Positions 3,136 through 46,856 of a stretch of 64,000 bases of DNA are shown here, piece after piece. Under the pieces are notes generated by a model. That model searched no databases. It worked only from the letters and a program-made list of their open reading frames with translations, and was not told where the DNA came from. Position 1 is the stretch's first letter, and every line of letters starts with the position of its first letter. The position numbers and the translations under genes were made by a program. Where the stretch lies: IMG/VR virus record IMGVR_UViG_3300030041_000009, positions 1 to 64,000 of that record. One strand, 5' to 3'.

Positions 3136-3242
3136 ATTGATGAATTAATCCGCTGATTTTCTTACTGTAAATCCTATCTTATAAGCGGAATTTATTACCA
3201 TTTGGATATATTTATTTTTATCCTATTTACTGATTCATCAAT
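3136..3242 (+). ncRNA. Candidate structured 5' leader (three-way junction)
   Basis: Pairings 3136-3145/3233-3242 (10 bp), TCCGCT/AGCGGA and GGATA/TATCC. Confidence 0.3.
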
Positions 3243-3261
3243 AAAAAAACAATTTAAAGAC

Positions 3262-3732
3262 ATGAGAAAAATTTTACTAGGCATAATAATGCTATTCGCT
3301 TTTAGTGTATATTCAAATACTCAAAACATTACAACAAGATTTATTGATAAATATAATGCATTAACTATATCATTAAGCAACGAATATAAAATCCCTGCTA
3401 GCGTAATTCTTTCAATTTCAATATGGGAAAGTGGTTCTGGAACAAGTAAATTGAGTAGAACTAAACATAATTATTTTGGAGTTAAACAAGGAAAACATTA
3501 TAGAAGTTATGAAAATGATTCTATATCATTTAGGCATTTTTGTGAGTTTACTTCAAAAAGAAAATATTATTCTAAATTAATAAATAATAATGTTACAGAT
3601 TATAATATATGGGTACATAACATTCAAAGAGGTGGATATTCGCAAACAAAAAATTGGGGTAAACATATCGTTGACATGATTAAAATATACAATTTAAATA
3701 AAATTGATAATCAATATGTTTTTATTGATTAA
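3262..3732 (+). CDS. GH73 glucosaminidase (FlgJ-like peptidoglycan hydrolase) with signal peptide
   Basis: IPASVILSISIWESGSG, HNYFGVK, GGYSQ; hydrophobic N-terminus MRKILLGIIMLFAF. Confidence 0.85.
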   Translation: MRKILLGIIMLFAFSVYSNTQNITTRFIDKYNALTISLSNEYKIPASVILSISIWESGSGTSKLSRTKHNYFGVKQGKHYRSYENDSISFRHFCEFTSKRKYYSKLINNNVTDYNIWVHNIQRGGYSQTKNWGKHIVDMIKIYNLNKIDNQYVFID

Positions 3733-3889
3733 TTTGAAAATTATTTAATTTATTGAGTTTTTCAATTCTATCATCTTTCAATTTTTTTCTTTCTGCTTCT
3801 CTATCATATTTATATGATAGTTTTGCGTTTGAAAAACTTGGATCTGCTACTAAATCATAAGTAAATAGTTTATTTAAAATTATTTTCAA
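3722..3889 (-). CDS. 55 aa mini-protein: prohead-protease-like motif plus RxxKLxxL tag
   Basis: Own translation (TTG start): MKIILNKLFTYDLVADPSFSNAKLSYKYDREAERKKLKDDRIEKLNKLNNFQINQ. Confidence 0.6.
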   Translation of the reverse strand: MKIILNKLFTYDLVADPSFSNAKLSYKYDREAERKKLKDDRIEKLNKLNNFQINQ

Positions 3890-4181
3890 TTGATTTTAAT
3901 TTCTTTTTTCTTAAATGCTTAACATATTCATTTGGAAAATTATCATAGTCTAATACAGGTTTATCAGATGCTTTTTTTATCATATCTAATTGCCATTGTA
4001 TAGATTCTATTGGATCCTCACATTCACTTTCATATGAAAAAATGTTTATTGAATTTTCTGTACAAGATTCAGGTATATCACTTTCATCATTGTAATATAC
4101 TTCATAAACACCAAATTCGACTTCAGAGTCAAAATCTGTTACCATTCTTTTTGCTAAAATTCTATAATTCCAATACGACAT
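3870..4181 (-). CDS. Phage protein (WNYR type) with RxxKLxxI tag
   Basis: MSYWNYRIL...YEVYY...LRKKKLKSI. Confidence 0.7.
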   Translation of the reverse strand: MSYWNYRILAKRMVTDFDSEVEFGVYEVYYNDESDIPESCTENSINIFSYESECEDPIESIQWQLDMIKKASDKPVLDYDNFPNEYVKHLRKKKLKSIENNFK

Positions 4182-4217
4182 AATATATTTATATCACATG
4201 ATAAAAAAAAGTTTAAT

Positions 4218-4247
4218 AAAAAAGTCAGAATAATTATTCTGACTTTT
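4218..4247. terminator. Bidirectional intrinsic terminator; identical copy at 15732-15761
   Basis: Palindrome AAAAAAGTCAGAATAATTATTCTGACTTTT. Confidence 0.75.
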
Positions 4248-5691
4248 CTATTGTATCTAATTTAATTAATTTGTTTGTTTTTATAGCTGATCGTATGTCA
4301 AACTTATCAGAATGACAACCATTTTGAAATGGTACTTTTTTTCTCCATAAGAATTCGTCTGATATAATATTTTCAAATGATTTTCTCAAAATATACTTCA
4401 AGTGTTTTCCTTTACCGTTATTTTCATCACGATATTTTGGAGGTATTCTTAAACAAAAATTCACAAAATTATAATCAGCAAATGGAGTTCTTGCTTCAAT
4501 TGTACCTCCATACATCATAGATTTATTTAATGTACTCAGATTTTTATGATTTACATTTTTAACTAATGATATTCTTCTGTTATGATATTTTGTTTCATCA
4601 TTCCAGCACCACCTTTTAACATCATCATATGATCCAAATATTTCATCACTAACATCTCCACCAAATACTACTTTAAATCCTCTATTTGATATTTCTTTAG
4701 CTAATAATATTTGTGCAATAGCAAATGATAATTGAATATAATTTTCACTTTCTATCGCATAAATTGTTTCTTGCAATTTTTCTTTCATTACATCAAATGG
4801 AATATCAATAATAACTAATTTTATATTATTTTCTTCTGAGAATTTTTTTGCAAAATATAAATCATCTTTTAATATTTTTTTTGAATTTGTGGTGCCAGAT
4901 ATATTTATAACAAAACTTGTAATATTTTGTATTCTTTTAGATAATAAATATGTTATTAATGTAGAATCTATTCCACCACTTAATATTGTGCATATGGGTA
5001 CATCTGATACTAATTCATTATCAATAGCGGCATTTAGTAATCTTCTTATATTCGTTGTATAATAATTTTCACCTTTGTCAATTTTGTCATAATTAATATT
5101 ATCAAATGTAAAATATTTTGACATTTTTAATTCATTAGTATCTAAAAAATATTCTAATACTGTACCAGGCTGAACATCACAAATATTATCATTGGTATCA
5201 AAACATTTTTTTTCACTGGCAAATATCAGTTTACTATCATACTTATAATGAAATGGTAATCTTCCAATATAATCCCTACCTAAAACCAATTTATTTTTAA
5301 TTTTATCCAAGATACAAAAACAAAACATACCGTCTAATGATGACATAAATTTTATTAAATCGTCAGAATATTCTATATAAATTAATAATAATAATTCTAC
5401 ATCTGATTTATAATTATTAATATTGTATTTTTTTCTCAAATATGAAAAGTTATCAATAGTTCTATTAAATAATTCACCGTTAAAAACAATAACATAATTA
5501 TCATCTTTACTATGAAATGGCTGATTTGAATAATCTGACAAATCAACAATAGATAATCTATTATGACCCATAAATATATTTTTATATTCGTATATTTCTT
5601 GATAATCTCTTCCTCTGTGCTTAATTTTATCTAATGATATCTGAATATCTTCTTTAGATCCGAAACCATTTCCACCTACAATTCCACACAT
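4234..5691 (-). CDS. asnB: Asparagine synthetase B-like glutamine amidotransferase
   Basis: MCGI Ntn start, HRG, HNRLSIVD, FNGE, LSGGIDS PP-loop, SDEIFGSY, EARTPF. Confidence 0.85.
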   Translation of the reverse strand: MCGIVGGNGFGSKEDIQISLDKIKHRGRDYQEIYEYKNIFMGHNRLSIVDLSDYSNQPFHSKDDNYVIVFNGELFNRTIDNFSYLRKKYNINNYKSDVELLLLIYIEYSDDLIKFMSSLDGMFCFCILDKIKNKLVLGRDYIGRLPFHYKYDSKLIFASEKKCFDTNDNICDVQPGTVLEYFLDTNELKMSKYFTFDNINYDKIDKGENYYTTNIRRLLNAAIDNELVSDVPICTILSGGIDSTLITYLLSKRIQNITSFVINISGTTNSKKILKDDLYFAKKFSEENNIKLVIIDIPFDVMKEKLQETIYAIESENYIQLSFAIAQILLAKEISNRGFKVVFGGDVSDEIFGSYDDVKRWCWNDETKYHNRRISLVKNVNHKNLSTLNKSMMYGGTIEARTPFADYNFVNFCLRIPPKYRDENNGKGKHLKYILRKSFENIISDEFLWRKKVPFQNGCHSDKFDIRSAIKTNKLIKLDTIEKSE

Positions 5692-8305: not shown

Positions 8306-8363
8306 AAAAAATCCAGAACTAATCTGGATTTATTGTTTATTTAAAAAGATTAATATTATTTAA
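8306..8363 (+). repeat. Imperfect direct repeat (terminator plus flank); second copy at 11471-11524
   Basis: AAAAAA(T/G)CCAGAACTAATCTG...TTTATTTAAAAAGATTAATAT(T/C)ATTTAA in both copies. Confidence 0.7.
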
Positions 8364-8602
8364 CTTATTTCATATTCACTTTTTATTTTTAATAACTTAA
8401 GTTTTCTCTGTTCTTGAAGTGTACAGAAATATTCATAGAAATTAGGATAATCTCCTACAAATTTAGTTTTATTAAGAGAAAATATTCCAAAATTATACAA
8501 ATAAACTATATAATCATCATAAAATATAATATAATAATATTCACCTTCAATATAATTATTATATGCCTTTTTACAAATATATTTTGTATTTTTATTTAAC
8601 AT
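8360..8602 (-). CDS. Small protein with RKLKLLKI tag
   Basis: Ends FCTLQEQRKLKLLKIK. Confidence 0.6.
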   Translation of the reverse strand: MLNKNTKYICKKAYNNYIEGEYYYIIFYDDYIVYLYNFGIFSLNKTKFVGDYPNFYEYFCTLQEQRKLKLLKIKSEYEIS

Positions 8603-15783: not shown

Positions 15784-17655
15784 TTAGTGAACTTCTTCGA
15801 AATCCACGTCATTTATGTTTTCAGATTCATCTTTATTAGTTGATGTACTTTCATTAGTTGATTGATTATTATTCTCTTCGTAAAGCTTAGAACTTATATT
15901 TTGCCAAGTATCATTCAATTCTTTACTATATTTATCAATATCATCCAGATTTTGAGTTTTGTGAGCTTCTTTAAGATTATCAAGCTTAGAATTCAATTCA
16001 GTTTTATTTGATTCATTCAATTTATCGCCATATTCTTCAATTTGTTTTTCAGTTTGAAAAATCATAGCATCTGCTTGATTAAGTTTATCAATCTTTTCTT
16101 TTTCTTTTTTATCTGATTCCGCATTTTGCTCAGCTTCCATCTTCATTTTTTCAATTTCTTCTTTTGTTAAAGATGATTTACCTTCTATTCTAATATCATT
16201 AGATTTACCAGTTGCTTTATCAACTGCTTTAACTGTCAAAATTGAATTGCTATCTAAACTGAATGTAATTTCAATCTGTGGTGTGCCTCTACGAGCAGGT
16301 GGAACATCAAGTGAAAATGTGCCTAAATGTTTATTGTTTTTGTATAGAGGTCTATCTCCAGTACAAACATTTACCTGTACGCTTGGTTGTGAATCTGATG
16401 CTGTACTAAATACTTGACTCTTAGATGTCGGGATCGTAGTATTTGCGGGAATCATGATAGTAGCAATTTCACCCATTGTCTCAATAGAAAAGTTCAACGC
16501 TGTTACATCAAGTAATAATATATCTGTATTATCTCCATTTAATACAGAACCTTGAATAGCGGCTCCAGATGCAATTGCAGTATCAGCATTTAGAGATTTA
16601 TTTGCTTTTTTACCAAAGTATTTTTCAATACTTTCTACCAAATAAGGTATCCTGGTGCTACCCCCCACTAAAATTATATCATCAAATTGTGAAATTTGTT
16701 TGTTACTTTTCTTAAGTGATGACATAATTAATTTCATTGTTTTATCAACATAAAATTGAATTAATTGCTCAAATTTAGCACGAGTAATAATTTTATTTAA
16801 ATGTCGTGGTTGTCCATCTACCGCCGTGATGTACGGTAAGTTGATTTCAGTTTGTGTTACACTAGATAATTCTATTTTTGCTTTTTCTGCGGATTCAGTA
16901 ATACGTTGTAGTGCCATTGAATCTTTACGAATATCTACACCAGTTTCTTTTAAAAATTCTTCAGAAACATAATCAACAATTGCATCATCAATCAAATTTC
17001 CGCCTAAATCTAAATTACCGTCTGTTGATAGTACTTCATATAAACCATCTGATACCGTAATTGCTGAGCTATCCGTTGTACAACCACCAGCATCTATGAC
17101 CATATATAGTTTATCTGTCTTATCTTTAATATTTAATGCTGCTGCTGTTGGCTCTGAAATAATTCTATCTACTTGAAACCCAGCTATTTCACCTGCTACC
17201 TTAGTGCAACTTCTTTCATCCGAATTGAAATAAGCTGGAGTCGTTATAATTACCGAGTCTATTTTACAAGATAGATAATCTTCTGCTGTTTTTTTCATTT
17301 TTTGAAGAATCATTGCTGAAATTTCTTCTGGCGAATATACTCTATCACCAATTTTTACTGCTGCCTTACCATTATTATCAACTATATCATAAGGACGTTT
17401 TAGATGTTTAACTTCATCATATGTTCTACCAATAAGTCGTTTAATATTAAAAATGGTATTTTTAGGATTTAATGCTGCTTGGCGTTTAGCAGACTCTCCA
17501 ACTTTAATTTCTCCTGTTTTTTGATCAAATGCTACGATAGAAGGAGTTGTTAAATTTCCTTCTGCGTTTGGTATAACAACTGCTACACCTCCCTCAATGA
17601 TGCTTACTACCGAATTGTATGATCCAAGATCTACTCCAATAATTTTTTTACTCAT
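15784..17655 (-). CDS. dnaK: Hsp70 chaperone DnaK (divergent)
   Basis: GVDLGSYNS, TPSIVAF, TTPAYFN, EPTAAA, LVGGSTRIP, PQIEITF, C-terminal DVDFEEV. Confidence 0.95.
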   Translation of the reverse strand: MSKKIIGVDLGSYNSVVSIIEGGVAVVIPNAEGNLTTPSIVAFDQKTGEIKVGESAKRQAALNPKNTIFNIKRLIGRTYDEVKHLKRPYDIVDNNGKAAVKIGDRVYSPEEISAMILQKMKKTAEDYLSCKIDSVIITTPAYFNSDERSCTKVAGEIAGFQVDRIISEPTAAALNIKDKTDKLYMVIDAGGCTTDSSAITVSDGLYEVLSTDGNLDLGGNLIDDAIVDYVSEEFLKETGVDIRKDSMALQRITESAEKAKIELSSVTQTEINLPYITAVDGQPRHLNKIITRAKFEQLIQFYVDKTMKLIMSSLKKSNKQISQFDDIILVGGSTRIPYLVESIEKYFGKKANKSLNADTAIASGAAIQGSVLNGDNTDILLLDVTALNFSIETMGEIATIMIPANTTIPTSKSQVFSTASDSQPSVQVNVCTGDRPLYKNNKHLGTFSLDVPPARRGTPQIEITFSLDSNSILTVKAVDKATGKSNDIRIEGKSSLTKEEIEKMKMEAEQNAESDKKEKEKIDKLNQADAMIFQTEKQIEEYGDKLNESNKTELNSKLDNLKEAHKTQNLDDIDKYSKELNDTWQNISSKLYEENNNQSTNESTSTNKDESENINDVDFEEVH

Positions 17656-17658
17656 AAT

Positions 17659-18230
17659 TTACTTTAATTTTTTTTTTGAATTATTAATTTTTTTTAATTT
17701 TAATTTTCTATATTCTTTTAGTGATATGAATCTTTTAACATCTAATGAAAATGAACTATTACCAAATTCTTCAAATGATAAATTTATATATATGTAATCT
17801 AAATTACCAAAAGTTTTATAATAATCTGTTGTAAAATAATCATTATCTGATGAATACCACACTCTTCTGACTGTTAATATATCATATTTTTTAATATTAA
17901 TATTATCTTTTTCAAATAATTTATTATTTTTTAAAAGTTTCAAATAATCATCAAATGAAAATATATTATAATCTACAATTACTACTTTATCTCCTGATTT
18001 AAACACAACTTTTCAAGTTTTAATTTTCTATATTCTTTTAGTGATATGAATCTGTCTGCTCTGAAATTTCCTCCTATATTAATTAATTTTATATATTGAT
18101 TAAGCATATAATAATGACCATAACTTTCTATTTTATACGTAGAATATTTTTTCAAATTCTTATATGGTTCAAATGTTTTAGTATCATTACTATCATCAAT
18201 ACAAACTATTATATTTCCTTCTTTAAACAT
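17659..18230 (-). CDS. Two small FKxGD (KOW/SH3-like) proteins with an identical RFISLKEYRKLKL tail
   Basis: ORFs 17659-18006 and 17982-18230 share about 35 bp of identical DNA at the tail. Confidence 0.7.
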
Positions 18231-20062: not shown

Positions 20063-22420
20063 TTAAAATGTTTCACTAATTTCTTTCAATTTATTTTTTC
20101 TTTCAATTCTTTTACTAATAAAAAATGTTTTAATAATTATATAGCAATCAACGTTAACATCAGTCATTATTAATATAGAACTATTTTTTTCATCTTCATA
20201 AATGTTTAATATTCTATATTCTTTACCTACTGTTATTAATAAATCATTTGTATTATCATTTTTTATACAAATAGCTAATTCTCCAACTTTAAATTTGTTG
20301 TTTGATTTCATTTATTTTCATTTTTCTAAGTTTTTGTTTACTAATGAAATAAGATTCAGGTACAAAAAAATTATAATTATTATTACATATCATATACATA
20401 TTACTTGAATTACAATTACTTAATTGAAGTACTTTATATTCGTTATTTATTGTCAATAATAGTTCAGTAAAAGTATCATTTTTTATACAAATAACTAATT
20501 CACCAACTTTAAATTTGTTTTTTGATTTCATTTATTTTCATTTTTCTAAGTTCTTTTTTACTAGCAAAACAGGATTTAGGTACAAAATAATTAATATTTA
20601 TATCGCATGTTACGCATATATTATCAGTATTAAATATTCCCATTGCTGATATTTTATATTCTTTATTTATTGTCAATATATTTGAATATTCAAAGGTTTT
20701 TATACAAACAATGGTATCATTTGTTTTGAACATATTTATTTAGTTTTTCAAGTTTAAATTTTCTTAAATCTTTTAAATTCTTTTTATTTATAAAATATGA
20801 ATCAGGTAACGGCATTATAAGATTATTATCGCATATTATATTTAAATATCCGCTATTTTTATATATCCATAATATTTTATATTCTTTATCTACTGTTATT
20901 AATTGATTGCTATTTTTTATACAAATAGCATAATCATCAATTTCAAATTTATTATTTTTAACTAATTTCATTTAGTTTATTTAATTTTAATTTTCTATAT
21001 CCTTTTACACTTATAAATCTCGTCATATCATAAACTGAATATCCATATTTATTTTCAATTTCATCTAATATATATGAAGTGCTTTCATATCGACTACTAG
21101 TATCATCAAGTGATTCATAACAATTTCCATCATCTCCCCAATATGATAGAATTTTTTTAATTGTGTAAGTTTTATTTATTTCTAATGGATTTATTTTATG
21201 AAATTCTAACATATATGATACGAAATCATAAAAAACATAATCTTGTTTAGGTTCATTATCTATACAAACAACTACATCACCTATTTTGTACATATTTATT
21301 TAGTTTTTTTAATTTTAATTTTCTGATTGATTTAATATCAGTAAAAAAACTTATTGGTACAAATTGGCTGAATTTTTTAGTGTCACTTTTTACTACAATT
21401 TTATTTTGAAAATACCAATCAATATATTCAATTTTATATTTTTTACCTATTGTTAAATGTTGATCCCAATAATCATTATCATCAATTTTTACACAAGTGA
21501 CAATTTGGCCAATTTTAAAATCATAATTTGTCAATTCATTTTCTTTCATTTAGTTTATTTAGTTTAACTTTTCTTAAAATTAAAATTAATTGATTTTCGG
21601 GTAAAGATAATAATCTAAATCTCATATTTGTATTCACTATATGATTATAATGAATAGTTACAACATAATTATCATTATTACAATCATATCTTATTTCACG
21701 TATATAAAAATCACTGTCTGGTATTTGTTCATCATAATATTTTTTCAGTTCTCTTAATAACAATAAATATGATTTGGTATCTAAGTTTGAAACTATATTG
21801 GTTGGCATAATTTATTTAGTTTATTTAGTTTATTTATTCTGGATATATTATTTAATTTGCATTCAGATAAATAATGATGTTCAGTAGTATAAAAATATCC
21901 TGATAATCTATATTTTTTTCTCATTTTAACAGAAATAACATACTCAGAATTATTATGATAACTTTTTCTAAATCCTGATATATCATATACAGTATATTTA
22001 AAATTATCATTTAGTATATTTGAATAATATATTTTTAATTCTTTGAGTAAATTTTCATATGATTGCGTATTTTCTTTATATTTATACATTATTAATTTTT
22101 TCTAATTTTTGTTTTCTTAAAAAAATATTATGTTCTTTATCATCATTAAATTGATATAATATATCATTAACTACTTCATATTTAGAGTATGTAATAACAA
22201 ATGGCAAATAATCATCAAATTTAATATAGAAAGAATATTCACTTGACATAAAAATTGAAAAACTTAAATTAAATTTCTCAGTCATTGCAATTATTGCGCC
22301 AGATCTAATTAATTCATTTTTTTCATTCAATTGAATATATTTATCCATAGAATAACAGTTTTTAGGCATACCCCATAACCCGTTATCTTGTTTTTTAGAA
22401 TTTATTTTTATTATTTGCAT
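20063..22420 (-). CDS. Tandem array of nine small overlapping ORFs, all ending in the RxxK[LI]xx[LI] tag
   Basis: ORFs at 20063, 20289, 20509, 20717, 20958, 21277, 21536, 21793 and 22082; the first six are [FY]KxG[DE]-xxCI paralogues; near-identical junction DNA at about 20282-20332 and 20502-20552. Confidence 0.75.
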
Positions 22421-23846: not shown

Positions 23847-25879
23847 ATGATGAGAGCAATATGTAAGCTAGATTACGGACAGTTTGAAAATAACAAAACC
23901 TACAATTATTCATGCACTAACGACAATAAATTCCACGTTGATGGTCAATATGGAAAAACAGAATTTAATAAAAGACAATTTAATGCATTATTTACATTAG
24001 AAAGAACAAAAAACCCAAACAAATCATTTAATTTTTAATATCTAATTTATGAAATTTAATATCGGAGATAATGTTATATTCATAAATAATTCTAAAACTA
24101 TTTATGCTTGGGATCTTGTTGATTATAAAATCTATAAAATTGAGAATTTTTCAATTCGTTCGTCTGAATTTATGTATTCGGTGAGTGATAATGATAGTAA
24201 TACAACTCAAAGTTGGTATTTTGAATGTGATTTTATTTCATTGCAAGAATATAGAAAAATTAAATTAAACGAAATAAAACAATTATCATGAGAAGATTTA
24301 GTAAAAAATTAAAAAATATATTTAATTCTATTAATCCATATTACGAAATTAATAAAGAATCCGATAGATTTCAAGAACTCAGAATAAAATTGAATGAAAA
24401 TCGATTAGATTATATAATAAAAGAGTTTGAAAGAATAGAAAATATGAGTGATGAAGAAAGAATAGAATATAAAAAAAATTTATTGAAAGAAGAAGCAAAT
24501 AATATAATTGATAAATTAGAATCAAATTCAGAATTATATAAAGAATATAATAATATTATGAGGAGAAAGAAAATTAAAAAATTAGAAAGTAATGAGTAAT
24601 TTAGTAGAACATGCAAAAAGAGAATTTCTTAAATTAGGTTATAAACCAATTGATAAATGCGAAAATGATCCAAATAAATGGATACAAGAAAATATATTAG
24701 AATTACTTGAAATATTTTCTAAACAAGGTCATTCTGGATTTTCAGCATCATATGTACTTAGTTATTTTAATAAATTGGCTAATTTTGAACCAATTGCTCC
24801 GATTATGTGTACCGATGATGAATGGAATGATATAGCAGATGAATGTTATCAAAATAATCGTTGTTCTGCAGTATTTAAAGAAAAAATTGATAGTAATCCA
24901 TATTATTTGGATGCTATTATTTTTGTTGATGAAAATAATTCATCTTTTACTGGTAGAGCATATAATAATAGTCATGATAGTATAACAAGTAGGCAAACAA
25001 TTAAATTACCATTTACACCTAAACGTTTTTATGTTGATGTAGTTTATTATAATGATGAAAATCATATTAAAGATGAATCCCAATTAAAAGAAGTTTGGAA
25101 ATATTATGAGCATCAAGAAACTAAGTCATATATTAGATTACAAAAATTAAAATCAATAGAATGAAAATTGGAGATGTTCAAGTTTATTTAGGAGATACTA
25201 ATATGTATTATACTAAAAATAAAAAATATTATGTATATAGGATAAATTCTCATTTTATACCTGGAACTATTTGTGGACATATAATGAATGATATAGGAGA
25301 TAGTGTTTATTTTCGTGATGATGATATCGACAGGAATTGGATAGATTTAAAAAAATATAGAAAAGAAAAAATTAATAATTTAAATAATATTTATGAAAAA
25401 AACTTTGAATGATTTTGATTATAGTTTTAAATTTCCTGATAATGATTTTAATAATTTATCGTTAGAAATGCTACAAAAATGGAAAACATTAATCAATCAA
25501 GATAAAATAAAATTAAAAAAAGAAGAAAGAATTGCTAAATTAAATGAAATAAATTCTAAATAAAATGACAATACAAAATTATAAGAAAAAATATTTAATA
25601 TGTAAAGATGATTTTGGTAAAAATATTTATGTTGGAGATACTGTGGAATTATTTTGTCCACTTGAATTTTCAACTACATGGAAATCAATTGTTTATTGGA
25701 GTATGTTATCTGGAGCGTGGGTAGATTTTCCTACTATATTTATTGATACTCCAAATCCTCAAAGAATTTTATATTCATTACTTAATCAGCAAGAATATAA
25801 TATTTGTGATGTAGATAGTGATATTCCAATAAAATATAAAGGATATTGTAAAAAAATAAAATCTTTTTATACAAAATAA
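23847..25879 (+). CDS. Run of small ORFs (23847, 24049, 24288, 24592, 25161, 25393, 25565); five carry the C-terminal tag
   Basis: Tails YRKIKLNEI, RRKKIKKL, RLQKLKSI, RKEKINNL, RIAKLNEI. Confidence 0.65.
25393..25563 (+). CDS. 56 aa mini-protein: LxKWxxLI segment plus tag
   Basis: Own translation: MKKTLNDFDYSFKFPDNDFNNLSLEMLQKWKTLINQDKIKLKKEERIAKLNEINSK. Confidence 0.55.
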   Translation: MKKTLNDFDYSFKFPDNDFNNLSLEMLQKWKTLINQDKIKLKKEERIAKLNEINSK

Positions 25880-28508: not shown

Positions 28509-30001
28509 ATAGTTTCTAATTTCGATGAAAAACAATGAAATCAGTTTAAAATTAAGTTAATAATTTTTGGGGTAACTACAAACCCCTCTATTCCGTCAAT
28601 AAATATATTCGGAAATGCTTTTCTTAAAATGTTATAACTACCATTTACATCTGCGTTAATTATCACATTTGAATTTTTTATTTTATATAAACCTCTACTT
28701 TGACGATATCCACTGAATATTTTTTCGGTTTTGTCTCCGTAAACTGGTATTAAATCTAAATTCAAAAATGAAGATTTGCTAGTATAACTTTCTTCTTGTA
28801 ATATAACTCTTATTCCTTCTTTTTCGCACTTATACGATAACATCGATATAAATCTACTATGTGGAATCTGTATGAAATTCTGGTTGTTCTGTTTTGACAT
28901 GTTGCATTCTTGTTTCCAACCATCATTTTTACCAATAACTAATTTTGATATGTTATTGATAATTAATTCTTTAACTATTTGATTACTTGCTTTGTGTAGG
29001 TAATCATCTACTTTATTGTTTCGTTTATTTGTTAACTTCCTTATTCCTTTACTTGACTTCTTTTTATTAGTGATTTCAAGAACTGATTTCATTTCTGCTA
29101 AACGTTTATTGTAATATTGATTTGTAGATTTAAGTGGTCTACCATTAAAAATTAATGGTTGAAATCCTTTAATACTGGTCGTTAATGTCGCTAAATTATT
29201 TACACCTAAATCAATTGAAGCGTATCGTTTGTTGTCTCTGACTTGTTTCTTTTCATTATAGGTATAACACACTTCAATCACGTATTGATCAAGCCTTGGT
29301 ATTATCCGAACGCAATCTATTGAATTAATATCAGTTAACTTGGTATAGAATTCTATTTTAGTACCTGATAACTTGATTTTGTTTGTTTTCTTGAATACTT
29401 TTCTTGATATCGCTTGATAATTATATGAAATAATAAATCTTCCTTTAATCTTATGAAGAAATCCTGGTTGCTCTGGATAACTTTTATACTTTGATTTATT
29501 TTTACCATAATCTTTACATGAATTAAAGAAACTTTTGTAATTTCGTTGAACCTGAATGATAGTTCCAGTCGCAACTTTCATTGGTAATCTCTGAAAGCAC
29601 TCTTCAGACTTCATTACTTGATATAACTTATTTAAAGGATTATAATCAGTTGTTTCTAAACCTTGTCTGATTAAATAAACTGATCGATTATAGATGTTCT
29701 TTGATTTAAAACATAATTCATCACACTCTTTATAATTTGAATGTGATTTAGTAATTATATGTCTTTCCGTCAATTTCATGTATTAATACCTAATTTTAAT
29801 GTATATATTAATAAAAATATATTATTTATTTATATTTTATAGAAATTAAATCATTAAAAGTTTAAATTAATTTATTATTTTTATTTAACTATTTATTTTA
29901 ATTTATATGATAAATATTTACTATCTTAGTTTATTAAATCATTTGATGAAATAATTTCATTGAAATTCATTATTTTTCATTCATTTATATGAAGATTTTG
30001 A
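28509..30001 (-). mobile_element. Non-autonomous TnpB-only IS200/IS605/IS607-type element, about 1.49 kb
   Basis: Ends inferred from in-frame reconstitution at a shared TAT; TTCATTRTTTTTCAT inverted motifs near both ends; no tnpA. Confidence 0.75.
28541..29779 (-). CDS. tnpB: RNA-guided endonuclease TnpB
   Basis: SKNIYN, IDLGVNNL (RuvC-I), YLHKAS, EESYTSK, NADVNGSYNI (RuvC-III). Confidence 0.92.
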   Translation of the reverse strand: MKLTERHIITKSHSNYKECDELCFKSKNIYNRSVYLIRQGLETTDYNPLNKLYQVMKSEECFQRLPMKVATGTIIQVQRNYKSFFNSCKDYGKNKSKYKSYPEQPGFLHKIKGRFIISYNYQAISRKVFKKTNKIKLSGTKIEFYTKLTDINSIDCVRIIPRLDQYVIEVCYTYNEKKQVRDNKRYASIDLGVNNLATLTTSIKGFQPLIFNGRPLKSTNQYYNKRLAEMKSVLEITNKKKSSKGIRKLTNKRNNKVDDYLHKASNQIVKELIINNISKLVIGKNDGWKQECNMSKQNNQNFIQIPHSRFISMLSYKCEKEGIRVILQEESYTSKSSFLNLDLIPVYGDKTEKIFSGYRQSRGLYKIKNSNVIINADVNGSYNILRKAFPNIFIDGIEGFVVTPKIINLILN

Positions 30002-38649: not shown

Positions 38650-40498
38650 TTAATTCACAACATTATCATTTTTCTTTTCCATTATTTTTATTAATTCAAG
38701 AATTTTTGTTTTTTCATTAAATGTTTGAATTTCTTTATCAGAAATTTCTAATGGTTTAAAATGTAAAACTATTTCACCTCCTGCTAATTTGTGTAATTTA
38801 CCTTCAACAGTATGCCAATCTAAAATTCTGTGAATTCCTTCTATATGTGAAATTACATTTTCATTTTTTGATATTTTAATAGCATGTTTTTTATTTCTTT
38901 TATAAATTTCAATCGAAGGACATCCTTGATTACTAATAATACCAATCTCTTTAGAATTTTCATCAAATAATTTAGAATAAATAGTGAACTCTATGTTACA
39001 ACGCTTTGTTGTATATCCAAGTGATATACATATATCTTCCATAAAATTAATATTAAATACATCATTTATGACATAGTATTCCATTATACCATATTTTTCA
39101 ATTATTGGATTTTTAATATTATTATTTTTTCCTATCCATTCTTCTTTTGTCATATTTGTCATTTTACCAACAATCATAATCAGTTATATTTTCTTCTTTT
39201 TTTAAAAGATTATCAATTATAATTACTGCAGTTCCTATTCCTGTTGGAGTAAATCTATAACTAAATCTACCGCCTATTGCTGTTTTCGGTGATTTTTTCT
39301 TTTTCTCTTGTTTTTTGATCCATTCATTTGCAGATTTTTCTTCTTTTTCATTTAAATAATATGTTATCATAATTTAATATATTTTTAATTGTTCAAGTTT
39401 TTGCTTACGAATATCTTGTTTACAAAAATGATGATAATCTATTAATCTAATAGTAATTAATTTCATTCTATTTTTTGCAAGTTCTATATCAAAATATTTT
39501 ACTGAATAACAAGCTAAATCATCAGTATACGTAGATAATTTTATATCTTTTATTATATTTTCACCTAATGAATTTATAGATTTTAAATAATTTTTAACTG
39601 ATGTATTTTTCATTATTTTAATTTCTTAATTGTTTTAATTTTTATATCTATCATTGATATCAATCTATTTATTTCTTGAGAATGAATGCCACCCTGTGAT
39701 ATTTTAATTAAATATTGAATATTTATATTATATAAATCTTCTAATATGGTAATTGTATCAGAATTATTTATCAAAGTTTCAAGTTCTGTACTATCATTCC
39801 AAAAAATTTTATTTTTCCTTGTAGAATTAGTAGTAATTATTATTAATGAAGAAAATAAAAAAGATATATAAAGCGCCAATTTAAGCATAATATTAACTGA
39901 AATATCTTTATCTATAGTAATAAAATAAACCATCGAATAAATAATAATAAAATATATCACGAATGATATACCAAAAATAATCCATAAAGAACATTTACTA
40001 AAAAATTTAGTTATTGCTTTCATAATTTTATTTTTTTAAACTGAAATAATATAGAATTAACCATGATAAAACTAATATAATAAAAATAATTAACAAATAA
40101 TATTTACTAAAAAAATTATTTATTGCTTTCATAATTTTATTTTTTAAATGTAAATACTAAAAAGTTTATAAACCTATGCTTATGAATAATATCAAACAAT
40201 TACTTTTAAATTTATTTGAGAAAATAGAATACATATTTAAAAATATAGTAAATTCGCTAATCAATTCTTTAAATTTTATATCTGCATCTTCTTGACTCAT
40301 TTTATTATCAAGTACATAATTTTTAATATCAATCATTCTATTTGATAAACTAAATACTTTTTCGACCATTTTGTCAGAAAAAACTCCAATCAAATCAAAT
40401 GTTTCCATTAATTTGTTGAAAGATTTATAATTATCAATATTATTATCATTTATCCAAGAATTTTCTAAATTAAAACTATAGTCTGATTTCATTTCCAT
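38650..40498 (-). CDS. Five hypothetical ORFs (38650, 39164, 39374 tagged, 39613 two-TM, 40166)
   Basis: Co-oriented packed ORFs. Confidence 0.6.
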
Positions 40499-43707: not shown

Positions 43708-45309
43708 TTATTTTTTTAAAGTATATATAAATTTTAAAAATCCAGAATCATATATGCGATATACCTTCCGTTCTAACATAATTTCATGCTCTGTTTTATT
43801 TATATCAAATCCTTCTGTTACTAATTTATTTTTACGAAAATTACATTTATTATGCCTAATATTATCAATAATATATTGATAATCTGGCTTAACTTTATCG
43901 ACAAAATCAAATCCTATTTTTTTATATAAATTAATTTGACTAAAACTTCTATCAAAATAACATACTATTTCTTTCGCACTATATTTATTTATAAAATAAT
44001 TTAATAACGTAATTTCACTATCAATAATATTAGTATTTATTTTATTACTAAAACTTATCATCTCATAATTATTATTCTTAATATTAAATGTCATTAAACT
44101 AATTAATTCATTACCTAAATATAAACCAATTTTTATATTAGATTTAATATATCCATGTATATCATTTTTTTCTAAATAACTTTTAATTAAATTTATATCT
44201 AAAACTTCTCTTATTTCACAATCTTTTGAATCAATTACGTTTTCAAAAATATTTAATTTACTTAATATTATAGATTTTATAATTTCATTATTATAAATCC
44301 AGTCATCTTCATAAATATGAATCAATTGAATGCCTTGTTTTTCACATTCTTCAGTTTTATTTAAATGATAATCTTTATCTTTATTTAATTCATTGTGCCA
44401 CCATAAACCATTAAATTCAAATGCTAATTTCAAATTAGGTAAATAAATATCTAATTCTAAAGGATTTAAAATTTTTCTATCATTCAAAATTATCTCATCA
44501 TTATAATTTTCTTTAATAAAACCTAATAATTGTAACTCTAACCCACTAACATTTTTTGAAATTGGATTGCATTCTGTACATAATATTGTTTTATTATTTA
44601 TCCTATTCCACAATAATTTATAATCAATATTAAAATGATGATCTTTATGTAAATCACATTTAAATTCATATTGACCATTTGATAAATATCCAACAAATAT
44701 ATCTTTTCTATCTCTAATAATTTCAGATTTATATAATCCTTTATCAAAATTTTTCTTAAAACTAATAAATTGATTTTCTCTCATTTTAATAGATATTTCT
44801 GCATTTTGACTAGCATATTCTACTCCATATCTTTCTAAATTCGTTGATTTCATTTTATATGGATTTGTATAGTTAGCATCTCCATATTTTTCTAATTTAC
44901 TTACATGTCCTTTTTTGTTAATTTCTTTAGATTGCTGAGGATATTCGACACCAAAATTTTTTAAACAAGTTTCTACTTTTTTATCTTTAATAATTTGAGA
45001 ATTTGAAACATTTTCTACTCCATATTTTTCTAAATTTGTATTTTTTGATTTTTGTTCAGAACATTTTCTACTACAAGCATAATATGTTGTTGAATTTTTT
45101 GTGTTATAATTATATCTACTATATGAAATAATAGTTTCTTCGCCACAAACATCACATTTTGCTTTAATTTTTGATACACTTCTTGTAGGTAAATCTATTG
45201 CAAGTATAGAAATAATTTCATTTCCTCCTTTTACTTCATACCCTTTTTCTTTATAATATTTAATTTGATTATTAGATATTTTTACATCGACATACTTTGT
45301 CAAAATCAT
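43708..45309 (-). CDS. Hef-like homing endonuclease (Vsr/PD-(D/E)xK type)
   Basis: CDVCG, KYGV repeats, ELDIYLP...AFEFNGLWWH...IHIYEDDW. Confidence 0.75.
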   Translation of the reverse strand: MILTKYVDVKISNNQIKYYKEKGYEVKGGNEIISILAIDLPTRSVSKIKAKCDVCGEETIISYSRYNYNTKNSTTYYACSRKCSEQKSKNTNLEKYGVENVSNSQIIKDKKVETCLKNFGVEYPQQSKEINKKGHVSKLEKYGDANYTNPYKMKSTNLERYGVEYASQNAEISIKMRENQFISFKKNFDKGLYKSEIIRDRKDIFVGYLSNGQYEFKCDLHKDHHFNIDYKLLWNRINNKTILCTECNPISKNVSGLELQLLGFIKENYNDEIILNDRKILNPLELDIYLPNLKLAFEFNGLWWHNELNKDKDYHLNKTEECEKQGIQLIHIYEDDWIYNNEIIKSIILSKLNIFENVIDSKDCEIREVLDINLIKSYLEKNDIHGYIKSNIKIGLYLGNELISLMTFNIKNNNYEMISFSNKINTNIIDSEITLLNYFINKYSAKEIVCYFDRSFSQINLYKKIGFDFVDKVKPDYQYIIDNIRHNKCNFRKNKLVTEGFDINKTEHEIMLERKVYRIYDSGFLKFIYTLKK

Positions 45310-45371: not shown

Positions 45372-46856
45372 TCATAAAGGAGTTCCCTCTAATTTTTTAA
45401 GCTCATTTTGTAATTTATCAAGTTCTTCATGTTTTTCCATCATCACGTTTTTCCACTTTTTTCTATCAGAATATACTTCTCTCATTACACTACTAACAAC
45501 TCCTTCCTCATTCTTAAATACTGATCCATTTAAAGTTATGATATCATCAGGCTCAATTGTTAATTGATGTCCATTAAATATGGAATAATCTTTACCTTTT
45601 ACTTTTTGACCTTTATATGAATCTGCAGATATGTTAAATTCTCTCATAGTAGTAGGATACAAGGAACTAAAGTCAAAACAGCATGTCCATTCTGCCATAC
45701 CTCTTACAGGTTCTTTAACCCATCCTCCTTTTATAGATTCAGTTTCAGTATCTCCGTATTCACTATCTTCATTTCTAACAAGAACAATATTTTTTTGATC
45801 TCTTAATTTTTCTCTTAAAATTCCTTCTGTTAATGCAAGAGTTGAAATTGCATCTTTAATCTTAATTTTACCCAATACAGCCATGCCATAAAGTATGTCT
45901 ACATATTTCATTTTTTTATGTATCTGTTGAACTAAGCAACTATCTACAGCATTATAGAATACAAATTTCTTATAGTCCTCTTTATGCAATTTTTTTAAAT
46001 CTCCATCGTAATTAATTTTCTTAATTTCTTTTCCTAGTAATTTTTCAGAAGCGAAATCTAAAGATAAACTTTCCTTTACTTTAACTGATTGATCCCATTT
46101 TTTAAATAATTCCATATAATCAACTATAACCCTATGCGCTGGCATTTCTGCGTAACTTGGATTAATAGCATTAGGAGGATTAAATGGTTTATTAAGTTTT
46201 TTTGTGAATGAGGCAACCTCAGGTTCAAGTCCAATTCTTCTTGCTCTTGCAACTAAATATGTCCAGTCATAATTAATGAAATTCCAACCAGTTATTACTG
46301 GCATTTTAGGAACTAATTTGTTAAAAAAACTATGAAGCATATCATATTCAGTTTTGTACTGAACATATTTAAATTTATAATTTGTTCCAAATTTTTGAAA
46401 ATGAGTATTGATATCATTACCAATTGATTCAATTTGTGCAGCATCTAAAAACTGAGTTCCAATTACCAACACTTTATCTTTATTTACTATTGATATTGTT
46501 TGTATCTCACCCTCAGCAAGTTGTGGTTGTGGTTTACCAGTATTAAGAATCTCGTTCTCAATATCAACGAAGAATATATCTGGTTCTGCATATGAATATA
46601 TTTCATCTCGTTCTTCTTTATCAAAACTATCTATGAAATCATAAATGGAATACCGATTTGGGTATTTTGTATAAATCTCTTTAACATTTTCTCCTGACCA
46701 TGTGACAAATCTACCACTTTTTTCTTTATCATCATCAGTAGTTTTTATAAATTTTGTTGGGCGACTCCAATTTTTATATTTTAGTTTGATCTGACCAGAA
46801 CTATCTATATATGAGATAATTAGGTTATTATTTTTATATTCAGTATCTACAATCAT
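45372..46856 (-). CDS. Family B DNA polymerase, N-terminal subunit only (exonuclease plus motif A)
   Basis: VDIE (ExoI), GWNFINYD (ExoII), YNAVD (ExoIII), GGWV, DFSSLYP; motifs B and C absent. Confidence 0.9.
   Translation of the reverse strand: MIVDTEYKNNNLIISYIDSSGQIKLKYKNWSRPTKFIKTTDDDKEKSGRFVTWSGENVKEIYTKYPNRYSIYDFIDSFDKEERDEIYSYAEPDIFFVDIENEILNTGKPQPQLAEGEIQTISIVNKDKVLVIGTQFLDAAQIESIGNDINTHFQKFGTNYKFKYVQYKTEYDMLHSFFNKLVPKMPVITGWNFINYDWTYLVARARRIGLEPEVASFTKKLNKPFNPPNAINPSYAEMPAHRVIVDYMELFKKWDQSVKVKESLSLDFASEKLLGKEIKKINYDGDLKKLHKEDYKKFVFYNAVDSCLVQQIHKKMKYVDILYGMAVLGKIKIKDAISTLALTEGILREKLRDQKNIVLVRNEDSEYGDTETESIKGGWVKEPVRGMAEWTCCFDFSSLYPTTMREFNISADSYKGQKVKGKDYSIFNGHQLTIEPDDIITLNGSVFKNEEGVVSSVMREVYSDRKKWKNVMMEKHEELDKLQNELKKLEGTPL

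What the first reader, a model, noticed from the sequence alone, without database searches (positions are those of the whole stretch)
3722..3889. Unannotated mini-ORF carrying a prohead protease active-site motif
The TTG-start 55 aa ORF contains LFTYDLVADPSFSNA, a close match by recall to the Asp-containing motif of T4 gp21-like proteases. The rest of the catalytic domain is absent and the ORF ends in RIEKLNKL. This is the strongest single mimic example.
Basis: partly seen in the sequence, partly recalled or inferred. Interest (0 to 1): 0.75.

Follow-up and report, generated by a model that had tools for sequence, protein, structure and literature searches.

The report
Protease-derived mini-protein of huge phages
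The 55-codon ORF is a real, conserved small gene from a previously undescribed family in very AT-rich huge phages; it keeps only the last strand of the head-maturation protease plus a basic helix, so it cannot cut proteins and most likely acts by binding.

Summary
Window 3722..3889 (minus strand) is a TTG-start ORF of 55 codons. Residues 2-27 are homologous to the end of the catalytic domain of gp21-type prohead proteases. The rest of the protease is absent from the whole 256-kb contig.

The ORF is neither a chance match nor a lone relic:
- It is open, in the same place and with the same TTG start, in four diverged lineages of this phage (dN/dS 0.22-0.52).
- A profile of it finds about 25 further clusters of short proteins (42-86 aa) among 1.84 billion representatives.
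- That family aligns to the protease's Ser-strand/Asp-strand hairpin in a profile-profile comparison (probability 99.2%, E 1.6e-19). Every member ends in a long basic helix of the type R-x-E-K-I/L-N-x-L.

The family has no His. The window's short form also has no Ser, so it is not an enzyme.

The "mimic" idea (binding to the protease, the prohead or a host sensor) is plausible but untested. The co-folding job gave no answer, the RNA data are too sparse, and the phage's real protease is not on any contig I could reach.

The C-terminal tail belongs to a clade-wide R-K-x-K-L-x-K-L motif on about one gene in five. That motif remains unexplained.

The parts
3722..3889 (-). Mini-gene of 55 codons plus stop, with a TTG start. 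It is a short-form member of the protease-hairpin mini-protein family.
   Evidence: Searches show the ORF. The exact protein is called on 13 contigs. Orthologs occur in 4 lineages. The family was found and aligned.
3809..3886 (-). Codons 2-27, the protease-derived segment. It is homologous to the last core beta-strand and the invariant loop (..K-L-F-T-Y-D-L-V-A-D-P-G-F-x-N-A..) of gp21-type prohead proteases.
   Evidence: establish the match. The AF2 model of a protease domain places it at strand 143-155 plus the following loop. hhalign supports it at family level.
3740..3805 (-). Codons 29-50, a conserved charged segment predicted to be a long helix. It contains R-I-E-K-L-N-K-L (3746..3769), a slightly degenerate copy of the clade-wide R-K-x-K-L-x-K-L tail.
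   Evidence: The columns are invariant in 3 orthologs. The family helix 48-74 has pLDDT 86-95. The tail PSSM score is 5.0 against 13.6-41 for strict tails, p about 0.01-0.03.
3870..4181 (-). Upstream 103-aa gene (N-terminus M-S-x-W-N-Y-R, phrog_21321). Its tail R-K-K-K-L-K-S-I lies at 3888..3911. Its Ile-Glu codons ATT GAA create the TTG start of the mini-gene in the +1 frame.
   Evidence: The same gene pair and the same TTG junction occur in distant relatives L258 and L262.
3202..3732 (+). Convergent glucosaminidase (endolysin-like) gene. Its 3' end overlaps the mini-gene's 3' end by 11 nt.
   Evidence: Pfam PF01832, E 1.7e-23. The position is conserved in relatives.
4215..4252 (.). Terminator-like hairpin of 17 bp between the asparagine synthase gene and the 103-aa gene. 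It suggests that the 103-aa gene and the mini-gene form their own short transcription unit.
   Evidence: No such hairpin lies inside 3733..3869.

Best explanation
The ORF is a genuine small gene of a clade of very AT-rich (22-29% GC) huge phages from peat, permafrost and other metagenomes. It belongs to an undescribed family of 42-86-aa proteins with two parts. The N-terminal part descends from the C-terminal beta-hairpin of the gp21-type prohead protease: the catalytic-Ser strand is kept in the long form only, and the Asp strand and loop are kept in all members. The C-terminal part is a long basic amphipathic helix ending in R-x-x-K-I/L-x-x-I/L. The window's copy is the short form, starting right at the last strand. 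It has no His and no Ser, so it cannot be a protease. Shown: homology, family membership, conserved position, purifying selection, and loss of catalytic residues. Inferred: it works as a non-catalytic 'microprotein'. In this reading the retained strand needs a partner to fold. It would dock by strand pairing on the phage's own prohead protease, on a rival phage's protease, or on what that hairpin normally contacts in the prohead core, with the basic helix as a second contact or targeting element. It would thereby modulate where or when protease activity appears. It is translated from a weak TTG start placed exactly at the genome's usual gene junction.
For: - Homology.
- The parent family is gp21-like by Pfam S77/S80, by sequence to 5JBL and by fold.
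- The rest of the protease is absent from the 256-kb contig and from a 330-kb relative.
- Four lineages keep a gapless open frame of 51-55 codons with the same TTG junction. dN/dS over codons 8-51 is 0.22-0.52, while the other frames carry 8-14 stops.
- Placing the observed substitutions at random keeps the frame open only 3-13% of the time for window-versus-relative pairs.
- Synonymous changes occur at conserved Leu, Phe, Tyr, Asp, Pro and Lys codons.
- Family: 29 hits at library-wide E<=1e-3, nearly all short and aligned end to end. Several short forms have ATG starts.
- The Ser-strand similarity of the long forms was never used as a search pattern, so it is independent support.
- The catalytic-type positions are relaxed: the Asp of A-D-P becomes N or S, the invariant Gly becomes S or A, and the Ser becomes Ala in 3 of 14 long forms.
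- The upstream leader is A-rich and lacks a Shine-Dalgarno sequence, like real genes of this genome. Another junction start in this genome is GTG, on a 115-aa gene.
- Context: prohead proteases are known immune triggers (PMC12991175; the review PMC13728456 citing Richmond-Buccola 2024).
Against: - There is no evidence of expression. Two metatranscriptome runs give sparse contigs on neighbouring genes and none on 3742-4813.
- The TTG start is partly forced by the upstream gene's own Ile-Glu codons.
- Third-position bias of substitutions is weak, and dN/dS is higher than for the neighbouring gene (0.11-0.23).
- Co-folding of the mini-protein with a relative's protease domain gave no answer: ipSAE 0.00, partner pLDDT about 40.
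- The hairpin is modelled with low confidence in the monomer.
- The phage's own protease could not be found, so no cognate pair was tested.
- Nothing tested here links the family to protease regulation.
Confidence: 0.55

Rival explanations
1. The family is real, but its job has nothing to do with the protease. The hairpin is only a reused oligomerisation or folding module: for example, hairpins forming a small beta-barrel held by a helical bundle. The basic helix and tail would carry the function, such as targeting, nucleic-acid binding, or client binding to the phage Hsp70.
For: The best-predicted part is the helix, with pLDDT 86-95. The tail is shared with about 80-90 unrelated small proteins of the genome. 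An Hsp70 gene lies nearby in the window, L258 and L262. The catalytic-type residues are relaxed.
Against: The most conserved columns of the family are exactly those that are invariant in the proteases (Y-D-x-V-x-x-P-x-F). This argues that the protease-type contacts of that strand still matter.
Confidence: 0.2
2. The window's copy is a decaying remnant: a short form with a start-codon loss. It would be carried along as the 3' untranslated spacer between convergent genes, and only other family members would be functional.
For: It has a TTG start where ATG is normal. It lacks the Ser strand. It evolves faster than its neighbour. There is no RNA evidence. The tail scores below strict tails.
Against: The frame is open in four lineages at 73-85% nt identity with dN/dS below 1. 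Short forms are a recurrent, ATG-started architecture elsewhere. The TTG junction is conserved even in distant relatives that carry the long form. No terminator occupies the region.
Confidence: 0.15
3. It is not initiated independently. Instead it is made as a C-terminal extension of the upstream 103-aa protein by a +1 ribosomal frameshift in the 20-44-nt overlap.
For: In all seven lineages where it follows that gene it lies in the +1 frame, overlaps the gene, and lacks an ATG.
Against: No recognisable +1 shift site is present. Family members behind other genes have their own ATG. The +1 overlap is simply the commonest junction geometry in this genome.
Confidence: 0.07
4. It is a trans-acting piece of a split protease: the real enzyme of this clade would lack its last strand and receive it from this gene.
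For: The clade's protease was not found, so its architecture is unknown.
Against: The catalytic-type Asp and Gly are not conserved in the mini-proteins. Ser is replaced in some long forms. All five near-complete huge-phage genomes examined carry one intact full-length protease.
Confidence: 0.03

Closest known systems
T4 gp21 / phiKZ gp175-type prohead (head maturation) proteases (Pfam Peptidase_S77, Peptidase_S80; PHROG 207)
   Same: Residues 2-27 are homologous to the last strand and Asp loop. The long family members also match the catalytic-Ser strand. The parent proteins match T4 gp21 by sequence and fold.
   Different: Only about 25-40 of roughly 170 domain residues are present. There is no His, no Ser in the window's copy, no scaffold part, and the gene is not in the head module. 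The similarity is to a subfamily of protease-scaffold fusions, not to T4's own motif region.
SPN3US gp117, a diverged non-catalytic paralog of the prohead protease in giant phages (PMC5694885)
   Same: It is a protease-derived protein of a giant phage that has lost part of the catalytic triad.
   Different: gp117 keeps the whole domain fold. Here only a hairpin, or a single strand, is kept and is fused to an unrelated helix.
MicroProteins (small proteins derived from an interaction module of a larger protein that act by non-productive binding). This comparison rests on my own knowledge of the concept.
   Same: It is derived from a larger protein, lacks the functional residues, and is small.
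   Different: Binding to the parent protein is not shown here. I know of no phage example built from a prohead protease, and none turned up in the three literature searches.
C-terminal capsid-targeting tails of proteases and scaffolds. These include the HK97 protease C-terminus (from my own knowledge) and the ...L-K-K-R-F-K-K ends of the protease-scaffold proteins seen here.
   Same: They are basic-plus-hydrophobic C-terminal elements.
   Different: There is no detectable sequence homology between the mini-protein helix and those ends. Any targeting role is untested.

Membership tests
gp21-type prohead protease (Peptidase S77/S80) | His-Ser-Asp catalytic triad (as stated in PMC5694885) | tested here: not met
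   The ORF has no segment homologous to the His or Ser regions. Of the two Asp in the motif, the A-D-P one becomes N, N and S in the orthologs.
gp21-type prohead protease (Peptidase S77/S80) | Complete herpesvirus-protease-like domain of about 170 residues | tested here: not met
   Only profile positions 140-167 of 216 are matched. Upstream in the same frame there are several stops.
gp21-type prohead protease (Peptidase S77/S80) | Significant sequence homology to the family | tested here: met
   E 1.9e-7 against the whole contig. hhalign probability 99.2%, E 1.6e-19 at family level. PHROG 207 is matched by 18 of 27 members. Pfam S77 itself gives no hit for the ORF.
gp21-type prohead protease (Peptidase S77/S80) | Gene sits in the head module next to portal, scaffold and major capsid protein | tested here: not met
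   Its neighbours are asparagine synthase, a 103-aa gene of unknown function and a glucosaminidase. In relatives the true protease sits between portal and capsid genes.
Protease-hairpin mini-protein family (new; alignment A4) | Y-D-x-V-x-x-P-x-F block near the N-terminus, a C-terminal helix with R-x-x-K-I/L-x-x-I/L, and a length of 42-86 aa | tested here: met
   The block and helix are seen. D and P are invariant; V, F, R and K are at least 90% conserved.
Protease-hairpin mini-protein family (new; alignment A4) | Found in accessory regions of AT-rich huge phages rich in small overlapping genes | tested here: met
   Searches show the contexts. Hsp70, DUF7487, glucosaminidase and many tail-bearing small genes are nearby.
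Clade-wide R-K-x-K-L-x-K-L tail proteins | Strict motif within 12 aa of the C-terminus | tested here: inconclusive
   The window has R-I-E-K-L-N-K-L, with I at position 2 where 89% of tails have K. The PSSM score is 5.0 against 13.6-41, p 0.014-0.034. Other family members carry the strict form, for example R-K-S-K-L-N-K-L.
MicroProtein / dominant-negative fragment | Binds the parent protein or its partners | tested here: inconclusive
   Complex prediction with a relative's protease domain gave no answer. The cognate protease is not available.

The most novel reading that the evidence does not exclude
The family is a phage counter-measure built from the protease's own hairpin. By pairing with the prohead protease, or by occupying what recognises it, it would keep protease activity or exposure silent outside the prohead. 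It would thereby blunt host immunity that senses prohead proteases (CBASS). Alternatively it would poison head maturation of co-infecting phages that share the nearly invariant motif. The accompanying R-K-x-K-L-x-K-L tail would be a clade-wide targeting signal shared by about a fifth of the phage's proteins.
Probability: 0.12. Interest if true: 0.85.

Novelty: new variant of a known kind. Interest (0 to 1): 0.55.

Why it matters
Prohead proteases are universal in tailed phages and herpesviruses, and they have recently been shown to be triggers of bacterial immunity. A conserved family of tiny proteins carved out of the protease's catalytic hairpin would be a natural, testable candidate for a regulator or decoy of that enzyme. 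It would also be a clear case of a new gene born from a fragment of an essential one. In addition, the family marks a clade of roughly 700-kb phages in which about one gene in five ends in the same basic tail. That feature has no explanation yet.

Tried and rejected
- Chance similarity is rejected.
- A hidden full protease, another fragment, or an exon elsewhere in the contig: none was found.
- The region as a terminator for the convergent genes: no hairpin lies there.
- The tail as a by-product of AT-richness is rejected. A 24%-GC huge phage has 1 such tail in 400 kb, against 92 in 256 kb here.
- The tail as a pure DNA/RNA motif is not supported by codon usage. A dual role as leader of the next gene remains open.
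- The mini-protein as an internal-deletion derivative joining the protease end to the scaffold's C-terminal tail: no homology between the helix and those ends.
- Other tail-bearing small proteins as fragments of larger proteins of the same contig: none.
- Finding the clade's real protease failed. It is absent from the 330-kb relative. The 346-kb and other metagenome records cannot be searched. AT-rich pattern scans gave only phages without the tail signature.
- PDB sequence search with the ORF gave noise only.
- The ESM Atlas feature search gave nothing above its chance level.
- The word-index protein search found only the protein itself.

Full report
**What is there.** Window 3722..3889 on the minus strand is an ORF of 55 codons that starts with TTG. 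It contains L-F-T-Y-D-L-V-A-D-P-S-F-S-N-A and, near its end, R-I-E-K-L-N-K-L. It lies between two convergent genes. Its first 20 nt overlap the end of a 103-aa gene (3870..4181, minus strand, phrog_21321, function unknown). Its last 11 nt overlap the end of a glucosaminidase gene (3202..3732, plus strand, PF01832). The window is the first 64 kb of a 256,033-bp IMG/VR virus contig with 22% GC. CheckV rates the contig 36% complete, which suggests a genome of roughly 700 kb. The contig encodes Hsp70, RtcB, PhoH-PIN, a split family-B DNA polymerase and TnpB. It shares 27 proteins at 24-63% identity with a 96%-complete 429-kb phage that has a portal-protease-capsid module. It is therefore a huge phage. 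Its genes lack Shine-Dalgarno sequences and have A-rich leaders.

**Is the protease similarity real?** Yes.
- tblastn of the ORF against GenBank phages hits only huge phages: LR756500-04, LR745206 and Lak phages.
- In those genomes the hit lies at about residue 150 of 635-811-aa proteins. Their first 170 residues or so are a gp21-like protease and the remainder is a repetitive scaffold-like region. In one genome the gene directly follows the portal gene.
- More than 550 IMG/VR contigs carry the same nearly invariant block (K-L-F-T-Y-D-L-V-A-D-P-G-F-x-N-A-x-L). In the 80 best loci that I examined the block was always inside a long ORF.
- These long proteins reach Pfam Peptidase_S77 (up to 40.7 bits) and Peptidase_S80.
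- A profile of them finds T4 gp21 (5JBL) with E 4.3e-8.
- An AlphaFold model of one protease domain (pLDDT 79) has T4 gp21 as its top Foldseek match (E 8.5e-8), followed by herpesvirus proteases.
- A profile of 27 non-redundant protease domains scores the mini-ORF 29.9 bits, E 1.9e-7, against all 8912 open six-frame segments of the contig. The next best segment has E 0.5.

The matched part is residues 2-27 of the ORF. It corresponds to the last core strand (143-155 in the model) and the invariant loop that follows. According to PMC5694885, gp21-type enzymes have a His-Ser-Asp triad with the Asp about 25 residues after the Ser, which places the Asp in this block.

The profile-to-T4 alignment stops at position 136, before the motif. 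The close match is therefore to this subfamily of proteases, not to T4's own motif sequence.

**Where is the rest of the protease?** It is not in the 256-kb contig, and not in a 330-kb contig of a related phage. The frame upstream of the TTG is full of stops. Five near-complete huge-phage genomes each contain exactly one copy of the motif, inside the full-length protease, and no extra fragment. I could not reach the head module of this clade. The suggested alignment to the genome's own protease could therefore not be done.

**Is it a gene?**
- The exact protein is called on 13 contigs from at least five samples, always in the same gene order.
- Three further diverged lineages keep an ORF of 51 codons at the same place. 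Their neighbouring 103-aa protein is 76-79% identical to the window's. The ORF aligns without gaps, has the same TTG start, and is 58-63% identical to the window's copy.
- Over codons 8-51, outside the overlap with the upstream gene, dN/dS is 0.22-0.52. The neighbouring gene has 0.11-0.23. The two other frames carry 8-14 stops.
- Placing the observed substitutions at random keeps the frame open in only 3-13% of trials for window-versus-relative pairs.
- Conserved Leu, Phe, Tyr, Asp, Pro and Lys positions show synonymous changes.
- No terminator-like hairpin lies in the region. One lies at 4215-4252, upstream of the 103-aa gene.
- Two permafrost metatranscriptome runs give only sparse contigs on neighbouring genes and none over 3742-4813. 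This is not informative either way.

**The family.** This was the decisive result. A profile of three orthologs (the window's copy and two relatives) was searched against 1.84 billion representative proteins. It returned 29 hits at library-wide E<=1e-3. Two of the 29 are the query's own lineages. About 25 of the others are short proteins of 42-86 aa, most aligned over nearly the whole query; the best new one is 73 aa with E 7e-12. One hit is a full-length protease.

Aligned, the family has two forms:
- A long form (14 clusters) begins with I/V-S-x-R-x-x-G. This is the catalytic-Ser strand of the protease.
- A short form (12 clusters, including the window's lineages) begins directly at the last strand. 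Several short forms have ordinary ATG starts.

All members continue into a linker and a C-terminal helix of the type E-x-x-R-Q-x-L-L-x-x-R-x-E-K-I-N-x-L-N-x-L.

Support for homology to the protease:
- Profile-profile comparison of the family with the protease-domain alignment gives probability 99.2% and E 1.6e-19. It covers 39 columns, protease positions 126-165.
- The Ser-strand similarity was never used in any of my searches, so it confirms the homology independently.
- 18 of 27 members hit PHROG 207 (head maturation protease), best E 2.7e-5.
- No Pfam family covers them.

An AlphaFold model of a long member shows a weakly predicted hairpin and a confidently predicted helix, residues 48-74 with pLDDT 86-95. 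The Asp of Y-D and the Pro are invariant in the family. The Asp of A-D-P, the invariant Gly and the Ser are not conserved. Together with the absence of any His region, this rules out catalysis.

**Context of the family.** The longer contigs that carry members (62 kb, 32 kb and 21.5 kb; 25-29% GC) show the same kind of accessory region as the window: Hsp70, a glucosaminidase, DUF7487, radical-SAM and methyltransferase genes, a Tad3-like gene, and many small overlapping genes. In two of these contigs the gene directly upstream is a clear homolog of the window's 103-aa protein. There the mini-gene again lies in the +1 frame, with a TTG formed by that protein's Ile-Glu codons (ATT GAR), exactly as in the window. 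Elsewhere the upstream gene is a different small gene and the start is ATG.

**The tail.** In the 256-kb contig, 82 ORFs (strict pattern) to 92 ORFs (loose pattern) end in R-K-x-K-L-x-K-L/I, 1-12 residues before the stop.
- Their N-terminal parts fall into 59 BLAST clusters, and no Pfam or PHROG family covers them.
- Synonymous codon use inside the motif equals the genome background, which points to selection on the protein.
- In 54 of 82 cases the next gene's ATG begins -1 to +14 nt after the motif. The motif-coding RNA therefore doubles as that gene's A-rich leader. In 21 cases there is no downstream gene at the junction.
- A control huge phage of 24% GC has a single such tail in 400 kb.
- Contigs that carry the mini-family are rich in these tails.
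- The window's R-I-E-K-L-N-K-L is a degenerate instance (score 5.0 against 13.6-41; p about 0.01-0.03). Other family members carry the strict form.

I could not explain the tail.

**How it most likely works.** Homology, family membership, conservation and loss of catalytic residues are shown. The mechanism is inferred.

A lone strand or hairpin taken from the core of a beta-rich enzyme needs a partner to fold. The columns that the family conserves are those that are invariant in the proteases. The simplest reading is a non-catalytic microprotein that pairs with the prohead protease, or with what that hairpin contacts, and uses the basic helix as a second contact or targeting element.

T4 gp21 is a pentamer that is kept inactive until the prohead is complete (PMC9958956). 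Prohead proteases are now known to trigger CBASS immunity (PMC12991175; Richmond-Buccola 2024 as cited in PMC13728456). A protein that restrains or masks the protease is therefore biologically plausible. The single co-folding job, with a heterologous protease domain, gave no answer. This remains a hypothesis.

The rivals are a function unrelated to the protease, a decaying copy, a +1 frameshift fusion with the upstream protein, and a split enzyme. Each is listed with its evidence in the Rival explanations section.

**Verdict.** The feature is a new, non-catalytic, fragment-derived variant of the prohead protease family, conserved in a clade of AT-rich huge phages.

Noticed in passing
whole 256-kb contig; in the window e.g. 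8360-8602, 17659-18230, 20063-22420, 24049-24291, 39374-39613: About 82-92 small ORFs (roughly one gene in five) end in R-K-x-K-L-x-K-L/I, 1-12 aa before the stop. Their N-terminal parts fall into 59 BLAST clusters. Codon use inside the motif equals the genome background. In 54 of 82 cases the next gene's ATG starts -1 to +14 nt after the motif. A control huge phage of similar GC has one such tail in 400 kb.
   Followed up: partly
window 4215-4252: A strong terminator-like hairpin (17-bp stem followed by a T run) lies between the asparagine synthase gene and the 103-aa gene. It scores in both orientations (17-pair stem on the minus strand, 12-pair on the plus).
   Followed up: no
window 43708-45309 and 45372-46856 (minus strand): The family-B DNA polymerase is encoded as two adjacent ORFs of 494 aa and 533 aa. 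The second carries a DUF7487 match. Both halves have homologs about 11 kb apart in the 429-kb phage G006.
   Followed up: no
window 15784-17655 (minus strand): The phage encodes a full-length Hsp70 (641 bits). An Hsp70 gene also lies near the mini-gene in relatives L258 and L262.
   Followed up: no
window 3870-4181 (minus strand) and homologs in L258, L262, L095: The 103-aa protein (N-terminus M-S-x-W-N-Y-R) is conserved in distant relatives and matches phrog_21321. In seven lineages it is immediately followed by the mini-gene. In the 35%-GC relative L095 it is shorter, lacks the tail, and no mini-gene follows.
   Followed up: partly
G000 121730-125631 (outside the window): There is a tandem array of 12 paralogous genes of about 88 aa each. 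Each overlaps the next by 8-20 nt and ends in ..E-E-R-K-I-K-L-E-K-L.
   Followed up: no
window 28541-29779 (minus strand): A TnpB-like gene (OrfB_IS605 plus Cas12f1-like TNB domain) lies inside the phage genome. A homolog at 39% identity is present in G006.
   Followed up: no
loci L008-L215 (protease-scaffold proteins): The 600-830-aa protease-scaffold fusion proteins of hundreds of phages end in a conserved basic C-terminus (..L-K-K-R-F-K-K..M-K-F-R-L-N-R). They carry V-N-E-S just after the protease domain, which is likely a self-cleavage site of the L/I/V-x-E type.
   Followed up: no
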